From positions 195,801,243-195,864,088 of the forward strand of contig NC_058133.1 of assembly GCF_016433145.1 (NCBI RefSeq): a stretch of DNA of 62,846 nucleotides, written 5' to 3'. Positions 865-51,200 of this stretch are shown here, in pieces. How positions within the stretch are numbered: the first letter of the stretch is position 1; each line of letters starts with the position of its first letter. The notes below the pieces were generated by a model, which made no database searches, was not told the origin of the DNA, and worked only from the letters and a program-made list of their open reading frames with translations. A program made the translations under genes and the position numbers. This stretch comes from Gracilinanus agilis. Its lineage: Eukaryota.

Positions 865-2784
865 GGCAGCAGCAGCTCACTGTCCAGAATGTTTCTGGGA
901 ACAACCTGACCATCAGTGGCCTGAGTCCTACACAGATTCAGTTGCAGATGGAACAGGCGCTGGCAGGAGAGGTCCAGCCTGGGGAGAAGAGGCGTCGAAT
1001 GGCTTGTACTTGCCCCAACTGCAAGGATGGGGAGAAAAGGTAATTCTAAGACAAGGTCTGGAGAGAACCTGGGCCCCCCACCCTGTGTCCCAGAAGGTTG
1101 GAGGCCCACTGGCTTGTTGTGGGTAACAGGACTCCCGGACCACATTTTCTCCATTTTCTTCCATTTTGCTCTGGCCTGGCCCTCTGCCTCATCTTTGCCC
1201 CCCCCCCCCCTGCCCTGCTCTTCCGGCCCTTTCTCCTATCTCATCTTATTCCCCCCATTCCATGCTTCTCCCTTGCTCCCTCCTCACACTTTCCCTTCTT
1301 TTTTTTCTACTTTCCTCCAAACCAATCTCTAGGTCTGGAGAGCAGGGTAAAAAGAAGCATGTGTGCCATATCCCTGACTGTGGAAAGACCTTCCGAAAGA
1401 CCTCATTGCTTCGTGCCCATGTTCGCCTGCATACCGGAGAGCGGCCCTTTGTCTGTAATTGGGTCTATTGTGGAAAGAGGTTTACTCGTAGCGATGAACT
1501 CCAGCGGCACGCACGGACCCATACAGGTCAGATCCCCAGCCTGGCCAATTCCCACCATTCCCATGCACCCCAGTCTTACTGTGCAGGGACCACATCAAGA
1601 GAGAGCCAAAATCTTGGGAGGAAGGGTGATTCAGTACAAAGGATCCAGGATCCACTCCTATCTCTGGCATTTGCCTTTATGACCTTGGGCAAGTCACTTA
1701 CCTTCCTTGTGCCTTAGTTTCTTCAGCTATAAAATGAAAGGGTTTAGCAAGCAGCTAGGTAGTACAGTGGATAGAGCACTGGGCATCTGATTTCAAAATC
1801 TGGCCTAAAGCACTTCCTAGCTGTGTAACCTTGGGCAAGTCACCCCAGTTTGCCTAGCCTCTCTCCCTTCTATCTTAAAGTCGTTACTAGGATAGAAGGT
1901 AAGAGTTTTTAAATAATTAAATGAAATGAAGGGGGTTGTACTTGACCTCAAAGATCTCTTCCAATTTTAATAAATCTATGATCCTATGATTTACTTTGTG
2001 AGGGGGCTGGAATTTGCAGGGGAAACTCTATAATTCATCTCTCTGTGCAGAGCTAACTTCTAGGAGAGTGCATGTACATGAAGTAGTCTTTTGGATAAAT
2101 AGAGGCCTGACCATTGGTAGGAGAGGGCACCAAAGGTGTCAAAGAAATGCACATTCACAAAATAACCTGGCCAGAATTGAGTACCAACTGAATATCTTAA
2201 GGGCTGATGAGATTAGAAAGAGGCAGAGTCAAAACTGGAAACATTTTCCTTCTGTTTTGAAGGAAAGGATATAGACTGGTAGGAAGCAGTTAGGAGGGCC
2301 CCATGCTAGACAGAGAGAATCATCCAGAAGCATGGACTCCAAAATGAACAAATCCTACACAAGGGATTTGGGAATAGATTAATTTGTGACACAAAAAATT
2401 TGTGTTGGGGACAAATAAGGTGAATTGAAGTGGCCTCAATGGCTGGATTGAACAGTTGGATTTGATATGATAAACAGTATTCCCTGAGCAGAGTCTCTAA
2501 AGCCAGTTTAACATCAGGGCCTGAAGTGGGAGCTGCATCTTCATTTGGGTGTTTGGGTCCTCTTCAACCATCTTACAACTTGCCTTTGGGAGATGAGCTC
2601 TATTGAGGAGCAGAATGATTTCCACCCGCACCTCTGGGTCTGGAGGGTAGAGTGCTGGGATGACAGGCCTCTCTTCTCTCCAGGTGACAAGCGTTTCGAG
2701 TGTGCCCAGTGTCAGAAGCGCTTCATGAGGAGTGACCACCTAACCAAGCATTACAAGACCCATCTGGTCACAAAGAATTTGTAA
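865..2784 (+). CDS. SP2: Transcription factor Sp2, last three coding exons (5' part lies outside the window)
   Basis: Exons 865-1039 ([57 protein letters not shown], Btd box), 1333-1526 (C2H2 fingers 1-2, [37 protein letters not shown]) and 2684-2784 (finger 3, [32 protein letters not shown]). All introns are GT-AG and phase-compatible. Confidence 0.97.
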
Positions 2785-5700
2785 AGTCAACAGCAAGCCA
2801 TTGGAGGCCCTGCAGATTCAACTCCAGTTCAGCCTGGGCCCCCTAGTCAGAGACACCATGGCTGATTCCTTGCCCCTTTATTCCCTGACTGCAGCCCTGG
2901 AGAGAGGGGCTTCAGTAACCATGTTTCCTCCTTCCTAAGCCATTTGGCTGCCACAACAGCCCCTCTTTCCTCCCCCATAAACTCCTGGCCCAGATCCCGG
3001 ACATTGGCCATGTACAATGAGACGTTCTAAACCAGGACGAATGGGAACCTTTATTTCCAAAGGAAAAACATGAATTTCACTCCGTCGAGGAGCCAAGTGA
3101 GAATCCCCTTCTTTTCTCCTCTCCCATCCCATAGCACTGATGTGGCCCAGGGCAGGGGAGCCAAAAAGGAGACACATCCCCCTTTGCTGCTGTCCTTCCT
3201 GTGGGGTCTGGCATACCCTACTCCCACCTGAGGGCAGCATGGCAGCAACATAAAGAACACTTGGGACATGGTCCCAGAGCCCCTATTTGAGGGCCACCCA
3301 CAGAGAAAGTGGGAAGGACACCTGCCTCCCCCCCCCAAAAAAAAAAACAAAAAACAAAATACTTTCTTCCAGCACATTCCAACTTTATATTTTAAATATA
3401 TATATAACCACAGACTCCTCCTGATCTTCCCTGTTTTTCTATGAAGAACGTTGCCTTATACTCTACTTCAGATAATGAACACTGTGTATTGTGTGCGCTT
3501 TTAAATAATTTTATTTAATTGCTCCCTTCTTCCTTTCCTTATTTTTCCTCTTCCCCCATTCCTCTTTTTCAGTTTGGGGTTGGTGGGGGTGGGTTTAGGG
3601 GGTTGTTTTTGTTTTTGTTTTGGACAATGATGAACAGAAAAACATTTTTTCTCTCCATAGACTTTTCACTTCTAAATAACGTAAAATTTCAATTTGAATC
3701 CAGAATCTGATTTTTTTAAAGAACCCTCACATACATACAAACATACTGTCCCTCCCCCTTCCACTTTTTTCTCATCCCATACCCCCACTCAGATCCTGTT
3801 TGTGTATAGTGTATATTGTATAATAGACAATATTGTGTCTACTACANNNNNNNNNNNNNNNNNNNNNNNNNNNNNNNNNNNNNNNNNNNNNNNNNNNNNN
3901 NNNNNNNNNNNNNNNNNNNNNNNNNNNNNNNNNNNNNNNNNNNNNNNNNNNNNNNNNNNNNNNNNNNNNNNNNNNNNNNNNNNNNNTTGGTCAGCACAGA
4001 GCTGGCAAAGAATTTTTTCTTGCTAATAAATTTAGTTGCCTAAGGCAAAGTCAGCAGCTTGGCAATGAGGCTTCCTTTTGTCTTTGTCTTGATGGAGCCA
4101 TGAGCTTCAGGAACTGGGAGAAGAGTGCCAGGGGAAAATAGGGCCCAGCCTCCTCATCTTTCTTACCCTCAGCAAGAATTCCCATCTGAACTTGTAGAAA
4201 GTTGGGTATTTCTATTCATGTGTCCAATTAACAGCAAAGTTGACTACTGTTGGAGATCCGTTTGGGTAGATGCTTCCATTTTTTCCTCTGTAAGCCAACT
4301 TTCCCCAGAGAAAAAATTGATACTAGAGAACCAGACCCTTCACAAGCATTGTCATCAGCGCGGTAATGGCAGGAGTGCAAGTCTCCTCTTGGGTGTTTTA
4401 TTTTTAAGAATCACTTGTATGAGAGTATGGAAGGTTATGAAAATAAGGAGCAAGTCTACCTGCATTTCCTTCCCTAGATACACAGAGGAGAGGGGCATTG
4501 GGCAGAGGCCAGAGAAACCCCTGTCAATGAACTTGGCTCCCTAATGGAACAGAGAGGCCCTTAAGGAGCTAGATCAAGGGTCAAGGTATAAGATGTTTTC
4601 CTTGTGGATAAAGACTCTAATTTGCCCAAAGAAGGACACAAACCCTAAAGATGTGCCATAATAGGGATGGGTCACCCTGAGCTATCTACACTCTTGCTCT
4701 ATTCCCTTTATCACCAGTATTTGCTAGTCTTCAACCTAAGAGCATGGAGGCCCAGTGGTATATGTTCATAGCTGTTGAACCCAGCTAGAGTCAGCAGACT
4801 GGTTCAAATCCCAGCCTCAGCTCCCACTAGCTATCTAAACAAAGATAAGCCACTTAATTCTCTGAGACTCAGTTTCCTTATGTGTAAAAGTTATCACTAC
4901 CTGCCTTGCAGGATTTTTTGTAAGGAAAGTACATCATATAAAGGAGACTGCTCTCTTTGTGACACTTAATTGTACCCTGAATTCATGTCCTAAGAGAATG
5001 TCCTCATGAGCTAGAGCCAATACCCATACCTACACCATTTTGTACAGCAGAAAAGAGGCTCCAAGCTCATCAGCAGTGAGGTCTATGACCCCAGCTGAGA
5101 CTGGTTACATGCTCTTCATCTCAATGCTTCCTTCATAATTGGCAGGGAGAGCCACACTGTAGCCACCCGGAGCTCAGGTTGTCCAAACTTGGACAAAAAG
5201 GCATTTCCATTTGGCAGAGAAAACTGTTAGGGACTCAAACATTGGTAGACGGGGGGCATCTGTCTTGTGTCTACCTTATTTTTCAAGACGGTAAGTTGCA
5301 GAATTGTTGTCTTGTCTGTTAAGAAAAGGGAGTTTCCTCACTGGGAACTCTCTTCTTTGATGAAAGCAAAGGTCCAAATACCATTTCCCACCCTCCCCAA
5401 TCCCCCAGCCCAAATGTGCTATACTATTTTGTTTAAAACACTGCCAAACTGTAGTGTCAAGGAACAAAGTAGTCTCTTTTTCGGCCTCAGCAGAAGGCCC
5501 CCGTTCCCAAGACTTTCCCCTAGGCGGCAGGGTTTTTCCCTTTCCCCTTCATTCCCCATAAGACAAGCATTCTTATCAAGAGGGAAAGGTGAAAGCCCTG
5601 CATGTCCTCTACCTGCAGTCTGAAGAGTGGAAACTTTGAGCCACACAGAACAGTCATGGCCAAAAGGCCATGTTTTACATGTTAATGATTCTATTCGGCA

Positions 5701-5886: not shown

Positions 5887-5983
5887 CTATGAAGTCTTTT
5901 GGTCATGAATTTTGATTTCCAAGATAATATCTCCAAGATGAATGCAGAAGTTCCCACCTGCTCTGCAGACGGAGCCCTCCTCT
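5887..5983 (-). CDS. Candidate alternative terminal coding exon of the BEN-domain gene
   Basis: The acceptor gtctctcctgccag|A at 5983 matches the phase-2 donor GA|GTGAGT that overlaps the stop of the 6630-6521 exon. It would add EEGSVCRAGGNFCIHLGDIILEIKIHDQKTS*. A minus-strand AATAAA lies at 5850-5855. Confidence 0.5.
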
Positions 5984-6520
5984 CTGGCAGGAGAGACCAA
6001 CACAACACCTGGATAGAGCTGATCCTTCAAGGCTCCCATTCACTACCCCAAATCAACACTACTCGCTACCTGGCTTCCAGAGTGTATGTGGATATGTAAG
6101 AGCATGGTGTTGGGAAAGAGCCAGAGTGTTGTCCTAAATGGGGAGGGGGGACAGCCCAGTCTATGGCCTCCTAGTCCTCAGCTCTGGTTTCCCTTCCCAA
6201 AGCCATCAGTGTCGAAGGCAATGATGGGACAAGGCAATAATTCCCTCACTTTTTTCCTCTTCTCTGCCCAACTGACCCTGGACCGCACAGCTCACATGAG
6301 ATCCTAGATACTAGGATTTCAGTCCTATGGCTGCCCTCAGTAGGACAGGATTATGCTCAGAAAAACACAAGCCTTAGGGGAAGGATTATCCATTCCCACC
6401 AGTCTTCTGAAGACAGATCCTGATGGTGCAGTGCTTGCCTTGAGGGTGCTTTTTAAAAATATATAGGTATGTATCTGCCAGCAGATTGCAGGACCTGGCC
6501 CACCCCCGACCTCACCCCAC

Positions 6521-6630
6521 TCACTCCATCTTTACAATCATCTTCTTGACTGCCCTCCTTGAGGTCCCACACTTGCTGTTGATGACGGCATTAAAGTTAC
6601 AACCACGGCCACACACCTTGGTGACATATT
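6521..6630 (-). CDS. BEN-domain gene exon: C-terminal part of the BEN domain
   Basis: Acceptor ccttttctgtcttccccag|AA, phase 1. Translation (E)YVTKVCGRGCNFNAVINSKCGTSRRAVKKMIVKME. Confidence 0.85.
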
Positions 6631-9600
6631 CTGGGGAAGACAGAAAAGGAAGCTGTTCAGATCTAGCTCCGAGCCAGGAGAAGGTGGAGGGGGTGGGCAA
6701 GAGTGCACTCCCAGGCTGACACAGCCATTCTGATCTAAGTTTGCAAGGGGAAGATAGCATTCAGTCTCCCAGACTCTCATCGCTGCCTATATTAAACCAA
6801 AATGCCTTGCTCTTCGGCCATGCCAATAGCTGGAACTGTAAGGAGGTCGAGGATCAGAGAGAGCTGGCATAGAAATGGAGAATTATGTCTTTTCCCCATT
6901 CCCTAAGACATGGCCCAGTTCTCTGCTTCATCACTACTAGAACCACAGCTGGAGAAAAGAATCAGGATGGGAAGGAAGAGAGAGATTGACAGATGGGAAT
7001 GCTTTTCAACTCTTCGATCCCATCCATCCCCATTCTCATGGCCCTGCATGTACCATCAGGGTCAGGGTCCTATCCTTAAAAGATTTACATCTTCCTTCAG
7101 TTTTCGTTCTGGATATTCCCATCAGTTATTTCTTCTCAGCTTTCTCGACAACCCTTCCTGCTTCATACTGGATACCACCCTGAACTTGAACTCTCCCCAC
7201 AATGTCCCTCAGCTTTCTATTTATTCTCTAGTTTAATAAACTCCAAAAGCAGAATTGCATCGATTGCCAAGGGACGGATAGTAAAAGAGTCACCATTTTC
7301 AAAAAAACAAGAATGTTAGGGCTTTAGGGCTCGGTAGAAAATAACTTCTCAAACTAAAAACCTAGATCTTCAGGCCAGTCTCCAAGGCCACTACTTTGTG
7401 GCCCCCTGCCAGAGAGAAGCCAACAGCACATACTACTCCACCCCTCCTCCTGCCTCAGTCACAAAACACTACCCTTGAGGGAATTTGCCCAAGTACCTTT
7501 GATGGCATTGACCACAGCAACGGGCAACCGAATGGGTTTCTCCATGGTAGTGTTATTATGGGCAATTCGTTGACCAGTGGCAGAGGAGCGGGCCAGCGTC
7601 TCCCGAGAGAAGAAGTAATCCAACATCCTCCTAGTCATCAGCTTGGGTTTGTCTGTTGACACCTGAGACAGGTCATCCAGCTGGTGGTGAGTAATGTAGA
7701 CCCCTGAGTTGGGGATTAGCTCTAGCTTGGGTCTCCCATTCTCCTGTGGAAGGGGGAAAGGCACTGACTGTTAGCCTGCACTCTAGCAGCCATCCTATTC
7801 AGCCTGATGTCACCGGAGGGTCTCTTCAGGACCCAGCACCCACAAGGTGTCTGGTCCTAGATGTTAAATGACTAACTTCTTCCAGGGCTCAGGATTCATT
7901 TCTCAGGCCCTGGGGAACCCAAACCAGCAGATAGAACTTCTAATTATAAATTTCATCCCAGATTCCCTTCTCATCATTTCAGATGTCTTGCAGGCAGGTT
8001 TGGAAGGAAAAACCTCCTCATCCTAAACCCTCTAGTCTGTAGGCACTTGACTACTCAGCCCATTCGTGAAAGCTGCAGGTTTCTTAGGAAACCCAGACTT
8101 ATCCCCTACCACTGAGTTCTACGTAACACCCACCTCCACAGGTGATGCCCATACAGGGGTTCCATCAGGCAATGTATCCTGAACATTCTCCTCCCACAGA
8201 CAGGTGGCCTCGCTCAGTGTAGCAGGACTGCCCACCCCATCCTCAGAGGTCAACCATGCTGGAAAGCCACTGGGGAGACCTGCTCGAAGCCTACGGACTG
8301 GTGGAGACCGTGGGGCCTCAGCAGGAGTTCCCTTGGGTTCCACGGGTGGTGATGTGGGAAGCTGTGCAGGAAGGCCATTCACCTGGAGAAGGAAGGGGGA
8401 GCAACTCTAAGCAAGGGAAGTAGCAGCATCTCAGCTTCCTGTTGTATCCCTTACAATGAAGGTTGGCAACCTCCCCCAAAGGCGCTGAAAATGTTCCCAC
8501 CAGTGCCAGGCCACTGGTGTCCCTGTCCCCTGTTAAAGGACAAACAAGGCAGATTACCCTTCTGGGAACATGCCCCCCACTTCCCTGAGGGTATCCCACC
8601 CCAGGCTAATTCTAGCTGGTCCCTCTGCTTCCAAAAGAATTGCCAGATCATATCCAAACGGCTGGATTCTCCTTCCTTTCCTCTGCCCTCCTCATCCTCC
8701 GTATGTGGGCAACCAAAGTCAGAAAGAGTTTGTGGGGAAGGTGTGAACTGTTCCCTCCTAAAGAGTAAGACCATCCCATCAACTTGAAAACCAAAATGGA
8801 CCACATAGTCTATGTTCAATGAACAGGCAGAAATGATATGCATTTTAACACTTAGCTCTATTATTTTGTATATTTGAGTGTGGCCTTCAGGAATCTAGGC
8901 ATCTAGATAAATATTTTTGACAGAAGCCTATCCTAGCATCCACCCAATGCCCAAGCTCCATCTGTGTCTCTCTCCCCAGGAGCTACCAGCTCATCAAGGA
9001 CCCACCTGTAGTGCCATGTTGCTCTCTAGTAGCCCCACGAGGCCCTTGAGAAACTGGATGTTCCCTTCATTGACATCTGAGAAGAGAGAGGCCACACCCA
9101 TGGGGATGGCTAAATGAAGACAGATGTGTTTCCAGGAGAAGGCTACAGCTGGATGTTGATAGGACTATAAGGACCTATTAGACTCCGGACTCAACCTCCC
9201 CACTCCCCAAGCATGAGTGCCAATAAGCCCACTCCCTTTCCCAAACTCCTCTTTCTGATGTTCCTTTTGTTATAAATCCTGGACCCACTGGAAGTGTCCT
9301 CCTGGGGAGCCCACTGCTAAGTAATGGGTCCTAGGGAAAAGGAGAGATGATGGTTCATCAGGACAGAGCCACCAGAGGACTTTTGAGGCAAAGATGACAA
9401 AGGGATCATATATAACAAAGTAAGGAGGGAGGACAGAAAAAAGTGGCAACTCTTGGTGAAGGGCTCCTTGGGGAGGGCAGAGCCTGAATCTGGGAAAGTG
9501 GAATAAGGAACGAGGGCTCAAACAAAAGGAGTGAGTGGAAAATGCAGAATTGGTAGAAGAAAATGAGTTTATAGAGAAGTTTGATGCCTGAGTAGGAAAG

Positions 9601-12378
9601 GGGAAATGGTTGAAATGGAAACAAAAGCAAAGCTGGCCAGAGATCACCAAGTCATCCAAAGGCAACTGAGGAGGGGCCAAATCCCCCTGGGAACCCTGGG
9701 GGAACCAGCCAGCCCAGCCTGAGGGATCCCCATCCAGCCACCTCCTGTCCATATCCCAGAGAGGACAGCTCCCGTTACCAAGGCTACTGGTCCCAGAGCT
9801 GAGGCTGGTGTTGGGAGAGGATGCTTTGAGCCCTGCACCACCTCGGGTGCTAGACAGCAGATCATTCTGCTCCTCTAGACTCCGCAGTTGACCCTTGAGC
9901 TGCTGATTTTCCAGCTCCAACTCTCGGATCCTCCTCTCTTGCCGTAGGGCTGCTTCTTCCCTAGAGACCAATAGCCTCCGAAGCTCTGCCATCTGTAATT
10001 CCAACTCCTTGACCAGTTCTGCATACAACCCGGTTACCTTGCCTCCTCCTGCAGCCCAAGGGCAGGCTCCTTCTGAGGCTAGGGGCTCTGTGCTTAAGGC
10101 CAGGGGCTCTGTGCTCAAACGGCTTAGAACAGGTGTGGGGTGGCACAGCCGGGCAATAGTGGGGCGAGCAGCCCTCAGGGGTTCCTGTGTCCTTGGAAAT
10201 CGAGTAGTGTCCTGGAGACCCCCAGGTCGAATGTCCAGGCTGCTGGTGCCACCACTTGGGAAGAAAGGAGCAGCTGGTAGATCTGGGACACTTAGTCCCC
10301 GTGGGAAGGGAGGACCAAGGTTTGGCCCATTGGTAGGCCATGGTCGCTTCCTGTTCTTGGCTTCTTCTTCTGGTGCTAGCAGTGGTGGGGGAGGCCTCCC
10401 CAGAGTCAGAATTCCCCGTGCTTGGACACTAGAAACAAAATACAAACCTAAGCCACTGGTAGCTGTTTCCAAAGCCCCAACCCAGGGAGAAAAGTATGGG
10501 AGAAAGTAGTGTATGATAGGGAAGACCTCCCTTGGATATTTCCACCTCCCGATTTCATCCAAATAAGGTACTAAAATGATTCTAGTTCTAGTTCCTAAGG
10601 CAACTCCTCCAGGATATTAGGGACTTGGATTTCTGGAGACAGGTAGGATGTCCATATCCCGGAATCAACCCCTCAGAAAATATATCAAGCGTAATCTCTC
10701 AGGGTCCAACTAAGAAGCGTGGCCCCAGTACAAGACAAATAGAGCCTGGAAGCTCCAGAAGACAAGGATTCAGGCCTTCACCAGGCCAGTGCCCAACACA
10801 AAGTAATGCTTAATAAAAGCAGTTTACATATAGTACCTCTTTCAAAGTCAATAAACATTTTTTGAATAGATATCCCAGTGTGTAAACCCTAGTGCTGGCT
10901 ACAAAAGGAAAATCAGAAGAGGGAGGTGTGATCCCTGACCTCAGGGACCCTTCAGTCTAAAAGGGGTGAGTGGGGTACCTAAGAAAGAGCAAGACAGATT
11001 TACAAAGCAATCTTCTAAGAGCTACATTTGTATAGGGTCACCACTATAGAAGGGGATGAGATTAAGAAAGGAGGAATAAAGGATCCATGCATCAAGGACA
11101 GGGCTAAGCCTAGTGATAGTCTTCACTGGGTCCCATCTAGGCCTAGGCCAGGTCTTAGAGTCAGACTCCTGGGTCTTCAGGCTTTTAAATTCCATCACCA
11201 GGAACCAGGCTTCTCTGCTGACATACCAAATAAGAATCTTCCCTGCCACTATCCTGATGCCATTGACCTTGGAATGGAAGTAAATGGTTTACCCAAGATT
11301 TAGACTCAATCTACCAATCTCCCCCCTTTCTCCAAACCTCCACAGTACTCAGGGTTTCAAAATTTATTCCTTTTCTCATTCTCTGATAACCATCTTTGGT
11401 GTATTGTATTTTATCATTAGCCTTACCCCTCAACTCTTTTGCCTTTATTTCTAACCATCCCACCGGGCTCTTGACCTCTAAGGGCAGTTACACTTTTCTT
11501 TCTGTCTCTCTCAAATATAGTCCAATCCTCATGATCCTCTCCCCTAGTGCGCTACAGCCCAGGGCTGATCAATGTGGCCACAAGAACAGAAAGTATGTCA
11601 CCTTGAGGTGTGACATCAACATATTGCTTATATCAGTACCAGTGGATTTTACAGGTGGGGATATATACACAGCAAGAAAGTTGGTACAGTAAACTCTCAC
11701 CACACTGACAAAAAGCTGTTTCACAGAAAATCCCAAATAGCATATAATCCATTATTTCCAGCGGAATGAACACTAACTCTGATGTCAGAGAACCCAGGTT
11801 TACATCCCAATGCTGACATTGCCTATGTGACCTTGAGCAATCCTCCCTGGGCCTCAGTTTCCTCATCCGAAAAATGAAGGAGGAATTAGACTGTATGGCT
11901 TCTGTGGTCCCTTCCAGCTCTAGGACCCTTTGAGGCCTTCTAGTGAATATATACATGCATATATATATATACACATATATATGTACACACATATTACACA
12001 TACATACATACATATGTAATTGGCAGAATTTCTCTCCCTGATGGTGTTGGCTCTGAAAATGTATCACCCAGAGTGCACAATGATGGCTGAGAGAAATCTG
12101 CATAAAATGGACTCTGGAGATTGACTATTCACTGTCTCAAAATATCAGCAAGAGGTCCCTTACCTGGCACACTCCAGGGACACTTGTCTTGGTGGCTCTT
12201 GGACCTCCAGTTCCTGATGCTGCTGAAAACTGGGACTGCACAGGGGACCCCCTCCCAGGGCAGCTTCAGGCAAGTCAAAGGTGGGATGAGCATCAGCTGG
12301 CTCTCCATTACCCAGTCCTGAGTCCACAGCCTGGAAGTGGCCTTGTAAAGCCACCCTCTCCCCGGCCCCCTCAGCCAT
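6521..12378 (-). CDS. Unnamed coiled-coil + C-terminal BEN-domain protein (NAC1/NACC-like BEN), about 513 aa, 6 coding exons
   Basis: Minus-strand coding exons 12378-12164, 10428-9779, 9076-9006, 8382-8134, 7743-7497 and 6630-6521. Every junction is GT-AG, the acceptors are pyrimidine-rich, and the phases match (2,1,0,0,1), giving one uninterrupted frame. It encodes a heptad segment (LYAELVKELELQMAELRRLL...LEEQNDLL) and a BEN-like domain (KLELIPNSGVYITHHQLDDL...RRMLDYFFSRETLARSSATGQR...VNAIKEYV...NAVINSKCGTSRRAVKK). Confidence 0.85.
7497..7743 (-). CDS. BEN-domain gene exon: core of the BEN domain
   Basis: Acceptor cctttcccccttccacag|GAG, donor AAAG|GTACTT. Translation ENGRPKLELIPNSGVYITHHQLDDLSQVSTDKPKLMTRRMLDYFFSRETLARSSATGQRIAHNNTTMEKPIRLPVAVVNAIK. 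Confidence 0.9.
8134..8382 (-). CDS. BEN-domain gene exon: Pro-rich linker
   Basis: Acceptor cccccttccttctccag|GTG, donor GAG|GTGGGT. 249 nt, phase 0-0, open frame VNGLPAQ...LPDGTPVWASPVE. Confidence 0.8.
9006..9076 (-). CDS. BEN-domain gene exon: 71-nt exon, too short for the ORF track
   Basis: Acceptor ctctctcttctcag|AT, donor CAG|GTGGGT. Phase 1 to 0 bridges the neighbouring exons exactly. Translation (D)VNEGNIQFLKGLVGLLESNMALQ. Confidence 0.8.
9779..10428 (-). CDS. BEN-domain gene exon: large exon containing the coiled coil
   Basis: Lies inside ORF 9270-10562. Acceptor tttgtattttgtttctag|T (phase 2), donor TTG|GTAACG (phase 1). Heptad-rich E/R/L/Q segment at about 9853-10028. Confidence 0.8.
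12164..12378 (-). CDS. BEN-domain gene: first coding exon (exon 12415-12164, ATG at 12378)
   Basis: Strong acceptor cgtttctctccttctcag| at 12415, cagATGG start, strong donor CAG|GTAAGG. Translation MAEGAGERVALQGHF...PPRQVSLECA. Confidence 0.75.
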
Positions 12379-13468
12379 CTGCTGGCACAGACCTGGGGAC
12401 CAGCCCCCGAGGCACCTGAGAAGGAGAGAAACGATGAATCTTAGCCCAGGTAGGAGGTCAAGACAGGGAAGTCTGCCGCACCACACACGGAACAGAACCC
12501 ATTCTGAGGAGCGTGATCTCAGTCAGCGAGGGGCAAGCACAAGCACCTACCTGGCTTACGGATGCCCCTGTGCCCGGAGGCTCCCCGCAGCCCCTACCGC
12601 CTCCTCCTCGAACCCCGGCTCAGTCCTCGGTCCTACAACTAACTTCATCCCCGGCGCCCTCCTGGCGCCAGCACTCCCTTCCCCCAGCCCGGCTCACCCC
12701 ATTACCCTGCCCCTGTCCCGGCTCTCCCCTTCCCAGACCCCTGAGCTGCGCTCTGCGGTTCCCTCTTCCCCTCCCCTTCCATGGGACGCCTAATCATCCC
12801 GGCTGCCCGGAAGATTGCTACCGCCCCCCACCACCACCGTGCCGTGTCCCCCAAAGTCCTCGGTCTGCTTCCCCCTCCCTTCTCCTCCCCTCCCCTCCCC
12901 AGCCCCAGACTCTGGCAGCCCCTGTACCTTTAACAACACCTCCATGTGCGTATTGACGGCAGTGACTACATTTCCTGGTCTCTTTGTTCCCGCCCCCTTC
13001 GGCGCTCCCCATTGGTGCCGAGGCTCTGTTTTTCCCGTTCCAATTGGCCCCGTTCCCGGAAGACTCAAGCCAATGACCTTTCCGTGTTGTTCCCCCGCTC
13101 CCCCGACCCTGGGCTCTCATTGGATTCCAGGGTGGGGGGCGGGGCCGGCGGGAGGTTAGACAAGTGACAAAACCCTCGGATTAGGGAAAAAGCGAAGGTT
13201 CGGAAGCTGAGTCAGATCTTGTCGCAGAGGTGGGAGAAGGAATTAAAAAAAACAAAAAGAGAGGGGAGTGGGGAAAGTGGGGGAGGGGCGAGGGCCGGCG
13301 GTTCTCGCGTACATGCGAAGAGGCGTCACATGGCCTTGCGGTCGCCATGACGACCCGACTTGGTAGCAAGGCGGGCCTCGCGCTGCGGGCGTCGTGACGT
13401 GTGAAACAGGCTGCGGGCTTGCGGGCAAGATCTCTTACCTCTGCTGCAGGTGTGCGGTCTGAGCGGTC

Positions 13469-16621
<3,153 letters not shown>

Positions 16622-48200: not shown

Positions 48201-51200
48201 TGTTGTTTTTCTTCTATGTTTCTACTTCCACTCTTCTTCTGAATGTGGCTCATTTTCTTTCTCATAAGTCCCTCAGCCTTGCTCTGGATCCTTGCATTGC
48301 TGCTAGTAGAGAAGCCTGTTATGTTCGATTGTACCACAGTGTATTAGTCTCTGTGTACAATGTTCTCCTGGATCTGCACCTTTTGCTCTGCATCAATTCC
48401 TGGAGGTCATTCCAGTTCACATGGAATTCCTCCAGCTCATTTTTCCTTTGAGCACAATAGTATTCCATCACCAACAAATACCACAATTTGTTCAGCCATT
48501 CCCCAATCAAAGGACATTCCCGCATTTTCCAATTTTTTGCCACCACAAAGAGCGCAGCTATAAATATTTTTGTACAAGTCATTTACCTTATGATCTCTTT
48601 GGGGTATAAACCCAGCAGTGGTATGGCTGGGTCAAAAGGCAAATAGTCTTTTAAAGCCCTTTAAGCATAGTTCCAAATTGCTATCCAGAATGGTTGGATC
48701 AATTCACAACTCCACCAGCAATGCATTAATGTCCCAATTTTGCCACACCCAACATTCACCACTTTTCTGTCCTGTTAGCTAATCTTCTAGGTGTGAGGTG
48801 GTACCTCAGAGTTGTTTTGATTTGCATTTCTCTAATTATAAGAGATTTAGAACACTTTTTCATGTGTTTGTTGATGGTTTTGATTTCTTTATCTGAAAAT
48901 TGCCTATTCATGTCCCTTGCCCATTTATCAATTGGGGAATGGCTTGATTTTTTGTACAATTGATTTAGCTCCTTAAATATTTGAGTAATTAGACCTTTGT
49001 TCGAGTCTTTTGTTATAAAGATCCTTTCCCAATTTGTTGCTTCCCTTCTAATTTTGGTAGCATTGGTTTTGTTTGTACAAAAACTTTTTAAGTTAATGTA
49101 GTCAAAATTATTTATTTTACATTTTGTAATTTTTTCTAACTCTTGCTTGGTTTTAGAATCTTTCTTTTCCCAGAGGTCTGACAAGTATACTATTCTGTGC
49201 TCACCTAATTTACTTATCATTTCCTTCTTTATATTCAAGTCATTCACCCATTCTGAATTTATATTGGTGTAGGGTGTGAGATGTTGATCTAGACTCAATC
49301 TCTCCCATTTTGTTTTCCAATTTTCCCAGCAGTTTTTTTCAAATAGTGGGTTTTTGTCCCAAAAGCTGGGTTCTTTCGGTTTATCTTAGACTGTCTTGCT
49401 GAGGTCGCTTACCCCAAGTCTATTCCATTGATCCTCCCTTCTGTCTCTTAGCCAGTACCATGTTGTTTTGATGACTACTGCTTTATAGTACAATTTAAGA
49501 TCTGGTACTGCTAGGTCACTTTCCTTCATATTTTTTTTCATTATTTCCCTTGATATTCTTGGTCTTTTGTTCTTCCAAATGAACTTTGTTATAATTTTTT
49601 CTAATTCAGTAAAAAAGTTTTTTGGTAGTTTGATAGGTATAGTACTAAATAAGGAAATTAATTTGAGTAGGATGATCATTTTTATTATGTTAGCTTATCC
49701 TACCCAGGAGCATTCAATGTTTTTCCAAATGTTTAGATCTAGTTTTAATTGTGTGGAAAGGGTTTCATAGTTGTGTTCATATAATTCCTGTGTTTGTCTT
49801 GGCAGATAGATTCCTCAATATTTTATATTGTCTAGGGTGATTTTAAATGGAATTTCTCTCTCTAACTCTCAGGCAGTCTTTTAAAGCCCTTTTGCCCTGG
49901 ATCTTTCTGTTCAGGTTTGGAGGACCACATTTTAGGGAGAATGTTGAGATGTGTGGAGGATGGCCAAAGGAGCATAACTGAGTTGGTGAAGGACCTCAAG
50001 ATCATTTTACATGAAAATTGATTGAAGACATTTGGGGTATTTAACCTGGAGAAGAACAAGTTTAGGGAATGCATGACAGTATTTGCAGGGCTGTTGTAGA
50101 AAAGTAGGATTTGATTTTTGTTCTGGCTGACTTATGATTATTAAGAGGAAGTTGTAGAAAGGCAAATTTTAAAGTAAAACGTTCTAATCATTAGATCATC
50201 TAAACATGGGGTGTGTTGCTTTGAAGGCTAAATGGCCATTTAGTGGATGTTTTAGAGTAGTTCTCATTCAGGTAAATAGAGTAGCCAGACTCAGAGATTC
50301 AGTTTCTATTAACCTGATTATTTATTTTAAAAGGATCTCAGTAGTGGAGGGGGAGCTTATGCTCAGGAAATGCCACTGTCCATAGAACTTGTGTGTGTGT
50401 GTGTGTACGTGTGTGTGTGTACGTGTACATATACATACATGCCTTCACCCACCGGCTGCTAAGCTGCATCTCTGGAATACAGTATGGGCAGTTTCCTCCT
50501 TCTCTATTCTGTTCCCTTAGAATGCCTAGAGGTAGTCTACTCCATTGTGAATCCTGGAGGAAATTTGCCTTATAGTTTGAGTTCTGAACAAGTATTTTTG
50601 CCTCCTTCCCTTTGCTCCAGTGGAGATCTCTAGCCTCCTAGTTCGGAATGTTAGCTATGAGATACCCTCCTTGAAGAAGCAGATCGCCAAGTGTCAGCAA
50701 TTGCAGCAGGAATATAGCCACAAGGAGGAAGAGTGCCAGCTGGGAGCTGTGGAGATGAAGGAGCGCTTCTATAACTCCTGCAAGCAGTATGGCATCACTG
50801 TGAGTGAGATGCAGGCGCAATTCCTGGGTCACAGAGATGCTTGCTTGGGGCCTTCTATCTCACTCTGGAGCCAGAGTTGTAGGAGAACATTGGATGACAT
50901 AGTGTTCCAACTTGTCTAGCTCCAGGGTGTTTTTTTTGTTTTGTTTTGTTTTGTTTTTTAAGATTTCCTCTCTAGTCCTCTTCGCATGCTGTTTTTGACC
51001 CATCTCACTAGACTCCAGGGTTCCCATTAAGCTTTAGCTTCCCACTGCTTCCATATTAGCTCATCTCCCCTACTCTCTCTCCAGGGGCACAGTGTCCGAA
51101 GGGAGTTGCTGGCACTGGTGAAGGAGTTGCCGAGTTTGTTGACTGAAACTGGGGCCAAGGTTGAGTCCCTGTGGGAAGCTATTGAGCTCTACCAGGCCTG

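What the first reader, a model, noticed from the sequence alone, without database searches (positions are those of the whole stretch)
6521..7743. BEN domain resembles NAC1/NACC2 but is joined to a coiled coil instead of a BTB domain
The predicted domain KLELIPNSGVYITHHQL...KLMTRRMLDYFFSRETLARSSATGQR...KPIRLPVAVVNAIKEYV...NAVINSKCGTSRRAVKK aligns by eye with the NAC1 BEN domain as I recall it (KLELVTGTNVYITRAQL...[26 protein letters not shown]...KPLDSRVLHAVKYYC...NAIAADMCTNARRVVRK). BEN domains are known DNA-binding and chromatin-repressor modules. The layout (coiled coil plus one C-terminal BEN) is like BEND5, BEND6 and Insensitive, while the sequence is NACC-like. This suggests a distinct BEN subfamily; KNRKRP upstream is a possible NLS.
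Basis: partly seen in the sequence, partly recalled or inferred. Interest (0 to 1): 0.8.

Follow-up and report, generated by a model that had tools for sequence, protein, structure and literature searches.

The report
Unnamed coiled-coil BEN-domain gene
This is an intact marsupial gene for a probable DNA-binding regulator of an unnamed, very old and very conserved BEN-domain family; no placental-mammal member turned up in the protein databases, and no paper in the searchable library describes it.

Summary
Window 7743-7497 and 6630-6521 (minus strand) are the last two exons of an intact six-exon, 513-aa gene (12378-6521). It lies tail-to-tail with an SP-family zinc-finger gene and head-to-head with PNPO.

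The protein has a conserved basic cluster (KNRKRP), a 60-residue leucine-zipper-like coiled coil, a second conserved helix and one C-terminal BEN domain.

- **Closest relatives:** NACC1/NACC2 have the closest solved and named BEN domains (29-34% identity). The new domain forms its own clade, has no BTB domain, and keeps only one of NACC1's three base-reading residues.
- **Distribution:** 104 orthologues, nearly all labelled uncharacterized or hypothetical, occur in marsupials, birds, reptiles, amphibians, coelacanth and sharks. None is from a eutherian, monotreme or ray-finned fish.
- **Deeper relatives:** snail and brachiopod proteins share the same collinear layout.
- **Selection:** the BEN domain is 92% identical between marsupial and coelacanth, and dN/dS against a bird is 0.015-0.034.
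- **Literature:** no paper on it was found.

My reading is a dimeric, sequence-specific DNA-binding regulator of a tenth vertebrate BEN family, with a target site probably different from NACC's ACATGT.

Two other first-stage notes of this scan cover this same stretch of the same genome; none concerns other DNA. Novelty: a new member of a known kind.

The parts
12164..12378 (-). Coding exon 1 (Met1 to residue 71/72) in a G+C-rich promoter region
   Evidence: tblastn of the Monodelphis orthologue P0001; GT-AG model search; GC 0.588 at 12001-14000
9779..10428 (-). Coding exon 2: disordered region, basic cluster and coiled coil
   Evidence: 98% identical to P0001
10341..10358 (-). KNRKRP basic cluster, a probable monopartite nuclear localisation signal
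   Evidence: Position. In 34 orthologues the columns read K(19/34)-x-R(24/34)-K(33/34)-R/K(34/34). NLS function is inferred.
9849..10037 (-). Coiled coil (residues 203-265), leucine-zipper-like
   Evidence: AlphaFold2 helix 198-263, pLDDT 91-97. In the heptad register, Leu is invariant at four d positions and Asn at two a positions.
9006..9076 (-). Coding exon 3: second conserved helix with the motif N-I-Q-F-L-K-G-L-V-G-L-L-E
   Evidence: AlphaFold2 helix 288-309, block pLDDT 65-87. The motif recurs in snail and brachiopod proteins.
8134..8382 (-). Coding exon 4: linker ending in the conserved lead-in to the BEN domain (LWEE..LPDGTPVWASPVE)
7497..7743 (-). Coding exon 5: BEN domain part 1 (two beta strands, helices 1-3, the loop between helices 3 and 4, start of helix 4)
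   Evidence: Pfam BEN E 6e-8; NAC1 alignment; model
6521..6630 (-). Coding exon 6: BEN domain part 2 with recognition helix 5 (6598-6539) and the stop codon
5893..5982 (-). Possible alternative 3' coding exon, used by the predicted Monodelphis isoform X2
   Evidence: tblastn of the P0001 tail, 97% identity. A GTGAGT donor overlaps the stop codon at 6525-6520. Usage was not tested.
12379..13593 (.). G+C-rich interval between the start codon and the first recognisable PNPO coding piece; a probable shared bidirectional promoter
   Evidence: composition; PNPO exons on the plus strand at 13.6-16.6 kb. Promoter function is inferred.

Best explanation
The finding is the C-terminal BEN domain of an intact, expressed, six-exon gene (minus strand, 12378-6521, 513 aa). 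The gene belongs to an unnamed orthologous family of jawed vertebrates, known in databases as LOC103101315 in Monodelphis and XB5788060 in Xenopus.

The most likely mechanism is as follows. The protein enters the nucleus through the KNRKRP basic cluster. It pairs through a parallel leucine-zipper-like coiled coil. It then places two BEN domains on DNA, each inserting helix 5 into the major groove as NACC1, Insensitive and BANP do. It would therefore act as a sequence-specific transcriptional regulator, most probably a repressor like the other single-BEN factors. The second conserved helix (exon 3) would be a partner-binding or second oligomerisation surface.

Two of NACC1's three base-reading residues are replaced, so the target site is probably not NACC's ACATGT.

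Shown here: gene structure, fold, family placement, conservation and synteny. Inferred: nuclear import, dimerisation, DNA binding and repression.
For: - **Gene:** a search over GT-AG boundaries gives one open 513-aa frame. It is 93-98% identical to the Monodelphis protein.
- **Fold:** the AlphaFold2 model of the BEN domain has mean pLDDT 89.7 and pTM 0.83, with two N-terminal strands and five helices. It matches DNA-bound BEN structures at TM about 0.7: Insv 4ix7, NACC1 8yzs and Bsg25A 4x0g.
- **DNA-contact residues:** PMC11472053 lists the NACC1 contacts. In the alignment, Arg400/Arg401, Arg468 and the base-reading Arg469 are kept. Arg472 becomes Lys. Asp462 becomes Ser and Thr465 becomes Gly.
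- **Invariant helix 5:** the residues N-S-K-C..S-R-R are invariant in 34 orthologues.
- **Coiled coil:**
- **Selection:** dN/dS of the two BEN exons is 0.034 and 0.015 against a loon, and 0.066 and 0.082 against a shark. The BEN domain is 100% identical among marsupials and 92% identical to coelacanth.
- **Synteny:** PNPO lies head-to-head in the loon and the sixgill shark and in this window.
- **Transcription hints:** small runs from the window's own organism hold 0.98 and 0.67 of the exon-2 words but only 0.21-0.25 of the whole gene span. Intron-free Logan contigs encode bird and frog orthologues, for example 288 aa on a 984-nt contig.
Against: There is no experimental datum for any member of the family. 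Two of NACC1's three base-reading positions differ, and the loop between helices 3 and 4 differs too (Ser423 aligns with Ala, Arg429 with Glu). DNA binding is therefore inferred from fold and basic residues only, and some BEN domains, such as BEND3 BD1, bind protein instead (PMC8887127). In the full-length model the BEN domain reached only pLDDT 50-80. The kind of the runs used as an RNA hint is not stated by the tool.
Confidence: 0.8

Rival explanations
1. It is a vertebrate-specific offshoot of the NACC lineage: a NACC paralogue that lost its BTB domain and gained a coiled coil, not an independent old family.
For: NACC1/2 are the nearest named BEN domains. The new gene and salmon NACC1 share a phase-1 intron at the same aligned position, after AIK and AVK. 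The AU test does not reject a tree in which the new family and NACC form one clade (p 0.108).
Against: Snail and brachiopod proteins align collinearly over coiled coil, the I-x-F-L-K-x-L helix and the BEN domain. They also share the A-H-N loop and the I-N-S-K-C helix-5 motif with the new family, where NACC has A-A-D-M-C. The best tree puts the new family with the invertebrate proteins, though weakly (66/42). Scallop and brachiopod BEN domains are 42-50% identical to it, against 25-39% for NACC.
Confidence: 0.12
2. The BEN domain here is a protein-binding module rather than a DNA reader, and the protein is a coiled-coil scaffold or adaptor.
For: BEN domains can serve protein recognition, as BEND3 BD1 does with PICH (PMC8887127). 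Asp462 and Thr465 of NACC1 are not kept.
Against: The phosphate-gripping Arg-Arg of helix 2 and the R-R-x-x-K-K of helix 5 are kept, and most are invariant from shark to marsupial. The best structural matches are all DNA-bound BEN domains.
Confidence: 0.1
3. It is a misnamed orthologue of a known gene with the same coiled-coil plus BEN layout (BEND5, BEND6 or BEND7).
For: A protein-language-model search ranks BEND5 clusters second and third (scores 0.93 and 0.92). The layout is the same.
Against: Structure-based identity is only 11-13% to BEND5, 17% to BEND6 and 21-22% to BEND7. None of them is reached by phmmer at E 0.001 in 1.84 billion proteins, nor in the PDB at E 10, although BEND6, BEND3 and BANP chains are in that library. 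From my own knowledge the human BEND genes lie elsewhere, and the SP2-PNPO position holds across sharks, birds and marsupials. Xenopus has a separate reviewed BEND5 as well as this gene.
Confidence: 0.02
4. In this species the gene is a silent or decaying copy.
For: Decaying, still transcribed copies seem to exist in some birds (L001). No read-level evidence was obtained here.
Against: The frame is open and all ten splice sites are canonical. The BEN domain is identical to those of four other marsupial genera. The word shares of small runs follow the exon pattern.
Confidence: 0.03

Closest known systems
NACC1 / NACC2 (BTB-BEN proteins, also called BEND8 and BEND9)
   Same: They have the closest BEN domain by sequence (PDB E 3e-11) and by structure (29-34% identity, TM 0.72-0.74). 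They share the two strands plus five helices, the Arg-Arg of helix 2 and the Arg-Arg of helix 5. They also share a phase-1 intron at the same aligned codon.
   Different: The new protein has a coiled coil where NACC has a BTB/POZ domain. It forms a separate clade. Helix 5 reads I-N-S-K-C-G-T-S-R-R against A-A-D-M-C-T-N-A-R-R, so Asp462 and Thr465 are replaced. The loop between helices 3 and 4 differs. NACC1 has two further introns inside the BEN domain.
BEND5, BEND6 and Drosophila Insensitive (single-BEN factors with an N-terminal coiled coil)
   Same: They have the same layout of coiled coil plus one C-terminal BEN domain and the same fold (Insv TM 0.71-0.75). They are the likely functional model: dimeric, site-specific repressors (PMC8887127, PMC4281564).
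   Different: The BEN sequence is far from theirs (BEND5 11-13%, BEND6 17%, Insv 23% identity). There are no sequence-search hits except a marginal one to Insv (E 0.04).
BANP
   Same: It has a coiled coil plus a single BEN domain. PMC11472053 shows that oligomerisation shapes its site selection, which is a precedent for a role of the coiled coil here.
   Different: Identity is 19-22%. In BANP the BEN domain is central, not C-terminal. Whether the Arg that PMC11472053 links to CpG selection has an equivalent here was not determined.
Uncharacterised lophotrochozoan proteins (Gigantopelta LOC121384526, Lingula LOC106173933, Argopecten XP_069137448)
   Same: [quoted passage not shown] They are probably the invertebrate counterparts of this family.
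   Different: BEN identity is 32-50%, helix 4 is 6-8 residues longer, and their orthology is weakly supported in the tree (66/42).

Membership tests
BEN domain superfamily (Pfam PF10523) | Match to the Pfam BEN profile above the gathering score | tested here: met
   Exon 5 alone scores 33.1 bits against a cut-off of 23.2, E 6.3e-8.
BEN domain superfamily (Pfam PF10523) | Fold of about five alpha-helices with helix 5 as the DNA-reading helix | tested here: met
   The model has pLDDT 89.7 with two strands and five helices. TM is about 0.7 to Insv, NACC1, Bsg25A and BANP bound to DNA.
BEN domain superfamily (Pfam PF10523) | Sequence-specific DNA binding | not testable with these tools
   Only the basic contact residues could be checked: Arg-Arg in helix 2 and R-R-x-x-K-K in helix 5 are kept.
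NACC family (NACC1/NACC2) | N-terminal BTB/POZ domain | tested here: not met
   No orthologue has BTB in its precomputed Pfam field; the field lists BEN, plus a coiled-coil family in one protein and nothing in three. Pfam on the exon-2 ORF finds only weak coiled-coil families. Salmon NACC1 has PF00651 plus BEN.
NACC family (NACC1/NACC2) | BEN domain falls inside the NACC clade | tested here: not met
   NACC clade 100/100 and the new clade 99/99 are separate. The result is the same with a reduced set.
NACC family (NACC1/NACC2) | Base-reading residues Asp462, Thr465 and Arg469, which read ACATGT | tested here: not met
   In the HMMER alignment to 8yzs, Asp462 becomes Ser, Thr465 becomes Gly and Arg469 is kept. 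Residue roles are from PMC11472053.
BEND5/BEND6/Insensitive-type single-BEN factors | Coiled coil followed by one C-terminal BEN domain and no other domain | tested here: met
   This is a layout class, not an orthologous group.
BEND5/BEND6/Insensitive-type single-BEN factors | BEN sequence orthologous to BEND5 or BEND6 | tested here: not met
   Identity is 11-17% in structural alignments. There is no phmmer hit at E 0.001.
Unnamed family LOC103101315 / XB5788060 | One-to-one orthologue with the same exon split of the BEN domain, lying head-to-head with PNPO | tested here: met
   93-98% identity to the Monodelphis protein. The same split at residues 477/478 occurs in the loon and the shark. PNPO is adjacent in the window, the loon and the shark.

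The most novel reading that the evidence does not exclude
The gene represents a tenth, pre-bilaterian-split BEN transcription-factor lineage (coiled coil, I-x-F-L-K-x-L helix, BEN). It may be the ancestral form from which the NACC proteins took their BEN domain by fusion to a BTB domain. It has been kept almost unchanged for over 400 million years in most jawed vertebrates. It was nevertheless lost independently in the eutherian stem, in ray-finned fishes and in several bird lineages. In eutherians its remains may be the lncRNA SP2-AS1 / D030028A08Rik, which from my own knowledge occupies the same slot between SP2 and PNPO.
Probability: 0.3. Interest if true: 0.7.

Novelty: new member of a known kind. 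Interest (0 to 1): 0.55.

Why it matters
Work on BEN domains is framed around the nine human proteins (PMC11472053, PMC8887127). This gene shows a further family that human and mouse appear to lack and that therefore nobody has studied.

Its DNA-reading helix is invariant from sharks to marsupials and differs from NACC's at two base-reading positions. That points to a conserved, still unknown target motif and regulon.

It is also a clean case of a strongly constrained regulator that was dispensable in eutherians, ray-finned fishes and some birds. Gene-loss and lncRNA-origin questions at the SP2-PNPO locus can be tested directly with it. Xenopus and Monodelphis, whose proteins appear in the searches here, and axolotl offer laboratory systems.

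Tried and rejected
- **Reads:** There is therefore no read-level splice evidence; I used word shares of runs instead.
- **Marsupial DNA:** fetching it for a within-marsupial dN/dS failed. P0001, P0002 and P0005 are not on record as the longest products. I used the loon and shark loci instead. The snail locus is also not on record.
- **Short Logan ORFs:** ORFs of 54-150 aa with 73-90% identity were checked as possible eutherian relics. All are nearest to bird, turtle or lizard orthologues.
- **Literature:** searches for the locus names, SP2-AS1, D030028A08Rik, BEND10 and BEN with gene loss gave nothing on this gene. Two gene-loss or lncRNA-fossil papers do not mention it in their main text. Nor does the Kuraku gene-extinction paper. 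For PMC5577775 the four supplementary files held as text also have nothing; for PMC10195156 no supplementary file is held as text.
- **Full-length model:** it gave only a moderate BEN domain. A domain-only run with a more diverse alignment fixed this.
- **Rejected readings:** BEND5 or BEND7 orthology, membership of NACC, and a pseudogene in this species.
Full report
**What is there**

The window is mammalian-type DNA from a didelphid marsupial. The encoded protein is 93-98% identical, exon by exon, to 'uncharacterized protein LOC103101315' of Monodelphis domestica.

- 7743-7497, with acceptor cag|gag and donor aaag|gt.
- 6630-6521, with acceptor ccccag|aa and stop TGA at 6523-6521.

They are joined across a phase-1 intron, so the peptide reads ...NAIK-E-YVTK....

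A search over all GT-AG boundary combinations, scored against the bilby orthologue, gives one open frame of 513 aa in six coding exons: 12378-12164, 10428-9779, 9076-9006, 8382-8134, 7743-7497 and 6630-6521.

An SP-family C2H2 zinc-finger exon lies on the plus strand at 1166-1717. PNPO exons lie on the plus strand at 13.6-16.6 kb. The gene is therefore tail-to-tail with the SP gene and head-to-head with PNPO, across a G+C-rich interval (GC 0.588).

**Is the BEN call real?**

Exon 5 alone passes Pfam's BEN gathering score. The best solved relatives by sequence are the NAC1 BEN chains 8yzs and 7bv9 (E 3e-11 over 109 residues). Drosophila Insensitive follows at E 0.04. BEND6, BEND3 and BANP chains are in the structure library, but none was reached by sequence.

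An AlphaFold2 model of residues 380-509 of the bilby orthologue was built on a 32-sequence alignment. The BEN domain of that orthologue is identical to the window's. The model has mean pLDDT 89.7 and pTM 0.83, with two N-terminal strands and five helices.
- Against the PDB it matches Insv-DNA, NACC1-DNA and Bsg25A-DNA at TM about 0.7, then BANP, BEND6 and BEND3.
- Against reviewed UniProt models the order is: NACC2 (31-34% identity), NACC1 (29%), BEND7 (21-22%), Insv/Elba (17-26%), BEND4 (19-22%), BEND5 (11-13%), BANP (19-22%), BEND6 (17%), BEND2 (16%) and BEND3 (14-16%).

**The rest of the protein**

The full-length model is disordered over residues 1-190. It then has one long helix at 198-263 with pLDDT 91-97 and a second helix at 288-309.

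In a heptad register, the d positions 203, 210, 217, 238, 245, 252 and 259 are invariant (Tyr at 203, Leu at the other six). The a positions are Val, Val/Met, Leu, Ile, Asn, Leu and Asn, and the two Asn are invariant in 34 orthologues. Asn at a positions is the classic mark of parallel, in-register dimeric zippers (established knowledge from GCN4). Residues 224-231 interrupt the hydrophobic pattern.

The KNRKRP cluster lies in a conserved K-x-R-K-R/K column block. Exon 3 encodes the motif N-I-Q-F-L-K-G-L-V-G-L-L-E, in which Phe, two Leu and Glu are nearly invariant.

**Family and distribution**

An exhaustive phmmer search of 1.84 billion representatives with the BEN domain found 57 proteins. 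They fall into these groups:
- clusters of orthologues at 73-100% identity;
- uncharacterised mollusc, brachiopod and sea-cucumber proteins at 31-50%;
- NACC1/NACC2 at 31-40%;
- elasmobranch 'prdm11 isoform' proteins with a C-terminal BEN domain.

No BEND2-7 or BANP protein appears.

A word-indexed search listed 104 orthologues. They come from marsupials, many bird orders, turtles, crocodilians, tuatara, squamates, frogs, salamanders, caecilians, coelacanth and sharks. Nearly all are labelled uncharacterized, hypothetical, unnamed or simply 'BEN domain-containing'; one caecilian entry carries a 'cyclin-dependent kinase 12-like' label. None is from a eutherian, monotreme or ray-finned fish. This is absence from protein sets, not proof that the DNA is absent.

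Short Logan ORFs that might have been relics are all bird-, turtle- or lizard-like.

In trees of the BEN domain the new family is one clade (99/99, 94/96). NACC is another clade (100/100). The backbone is unresolved:
- The new family plus the invertebrate proteins is the best arrangement, but weakly (66/42).
- The new family plus NACC is not rejected (p-AU 0.108).

Outside the BEN domain, the snail protein aligns collinearly from the coiled coil through the I-x-F-L-K-x-L helix to the BEN domain (E 8e-21). The brachiopod protein shows the same elements by eye.

The new family and the invertebrate proteins share the A-H-N loop and the I-N-S-K-C helix-5 motif. NACC has S-S-T-N and A-A-D-M-C there.

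The new gene and salmon NACC1 share a phase-1 intron at the same aligned codon, after AIK and AVK. This supports common descent of the BEN-coding exons.

**Constraint and expression**
- The BEN domain is 100% identical among five marsupial genera and 92% identical to coelacanth.
- Nei-Gojobori dN/dS for the two BEN exons is 0.034 and 0.015 against the loon, and 0.066 and 0.082 against the sixgill shark. Synonymous sites are near saturation.
- The exon split of the BEN domain and the PNPO neighbour are the same in the loon and the shark.
- Small runs from the window's own organism (60-91 million letters) hold 0.67-0.98 of the exon-2 words but only 0.21-0.25 of the words of the whole 5.9-kb span.
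- Many small RNA-labelled runs of a sister organism hold as much of exon 2 as a DNA run does (0.44). This pattern fits spliced transcripts, but the kind of the runs is not stated.
- The read-laying run failed.

**Mechanism**

PMC11472053 gives the NACC1-DNA contacts:
- Asp462, Thr465 and Arg469 of helix 5 read the bases of ACATGT.
- Arg400/Arg401 (helix 2), Asn466, Arg468 and Arg472 (helix 5), and Ser423 and Arg429 (the loop between helices 3 and 4) hold phosphates.

In the HMMER alignment:
- Arg400/401, Arg468 and Arg469 are kept.
- Arg472 becomes Lys and Asn466 becomes Thr.
- Asp462 becomes Ser and Thr465 becomes Gly.
- The loop differs.

I therefore expect the same docking mode with a different site preference. 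With a parallel coiled coil, I expect paired or palindromic sites. Repression is inferred by analogy with Insv, BEND5/6 and NACC (PMC8887127, PMC4281564). None of this has been tested at the bench.

**Known or new?**

The fold, the domain and the layout are all known kinds. The orthologous family has no name, and no paper on it was found in the library. It lies outside the 'nine human BEN proteins' frame of the field. I class it as a new member of a known kind.

Noticed in passing
L001:1068-2186 (Logan contig of run SRR31383118): A bird-like, intron-free 5.5-kb contig strings PNPO, the BEN gene and the SP gene together in the window's order. Its BEN frame is broken into at least three frames, lacks the beta-strand part and has Cys-to-Arg in helix 5. 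It looks like a transcribed, decaying copy. No orthologue from Galliformes, Anseriformes, Passeriformes or parrots is among the 104 proteins, and falcon copies are the most diverged (72-77%).
   Followed up: partly
Proteins P0064, P0066, P0178-P0180 (sharks and rays): Elasmobranch proteins annotated as 'prdm11 isoforms' (679-1014 aa) end in a BEN domain of the same broad group, with helix 5 reading V-N-S-K-C-S-D-S-R-K-K. They form their own clade (98/98). I have not seen a PRDM11-BEN fusion described.
   Followed up: partly
window 5893-5982 (-) and 6520-6525: A consensus donor, GTGAGT, overlaps the stop codon. The predicted Monodelphis isoform X2 splices from it to an exon at 5982-5893, replacing the stop with a 37-aa tail. 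The tail is 97% conserved in the window.
   Followed up: no
window 1166-1717 (+): An SP-family zinc-finger exon (two C2H2 fingers by Pfam). It is the 3' part of the neighbouring gene, SP2 by position.
   Followed up: partly
window 13594-16618 (+): PNPO coding pieces (PNPOx_N and PNP_phzG_C by Pfam). PNPO is divergent from the BEN gene across a G+C-rich interval. The same head-to-head pair occurs in a loon and a sixgill shark.
   Followed up: yes
window 48756-49298 (-): A 180-aa ORF that looks like a LINE-1 ORF2 fragment by eye (motif ...TTLRYHLTP...). It has no Pfam hit at E 0.01.
   Followed up: partly
window 3847-3986, 30711-31090, 56964-57143, 62071-62202: Four runs of N (832 bases in all). 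They were left as they are, and none touches the gene.
   Followed up: no
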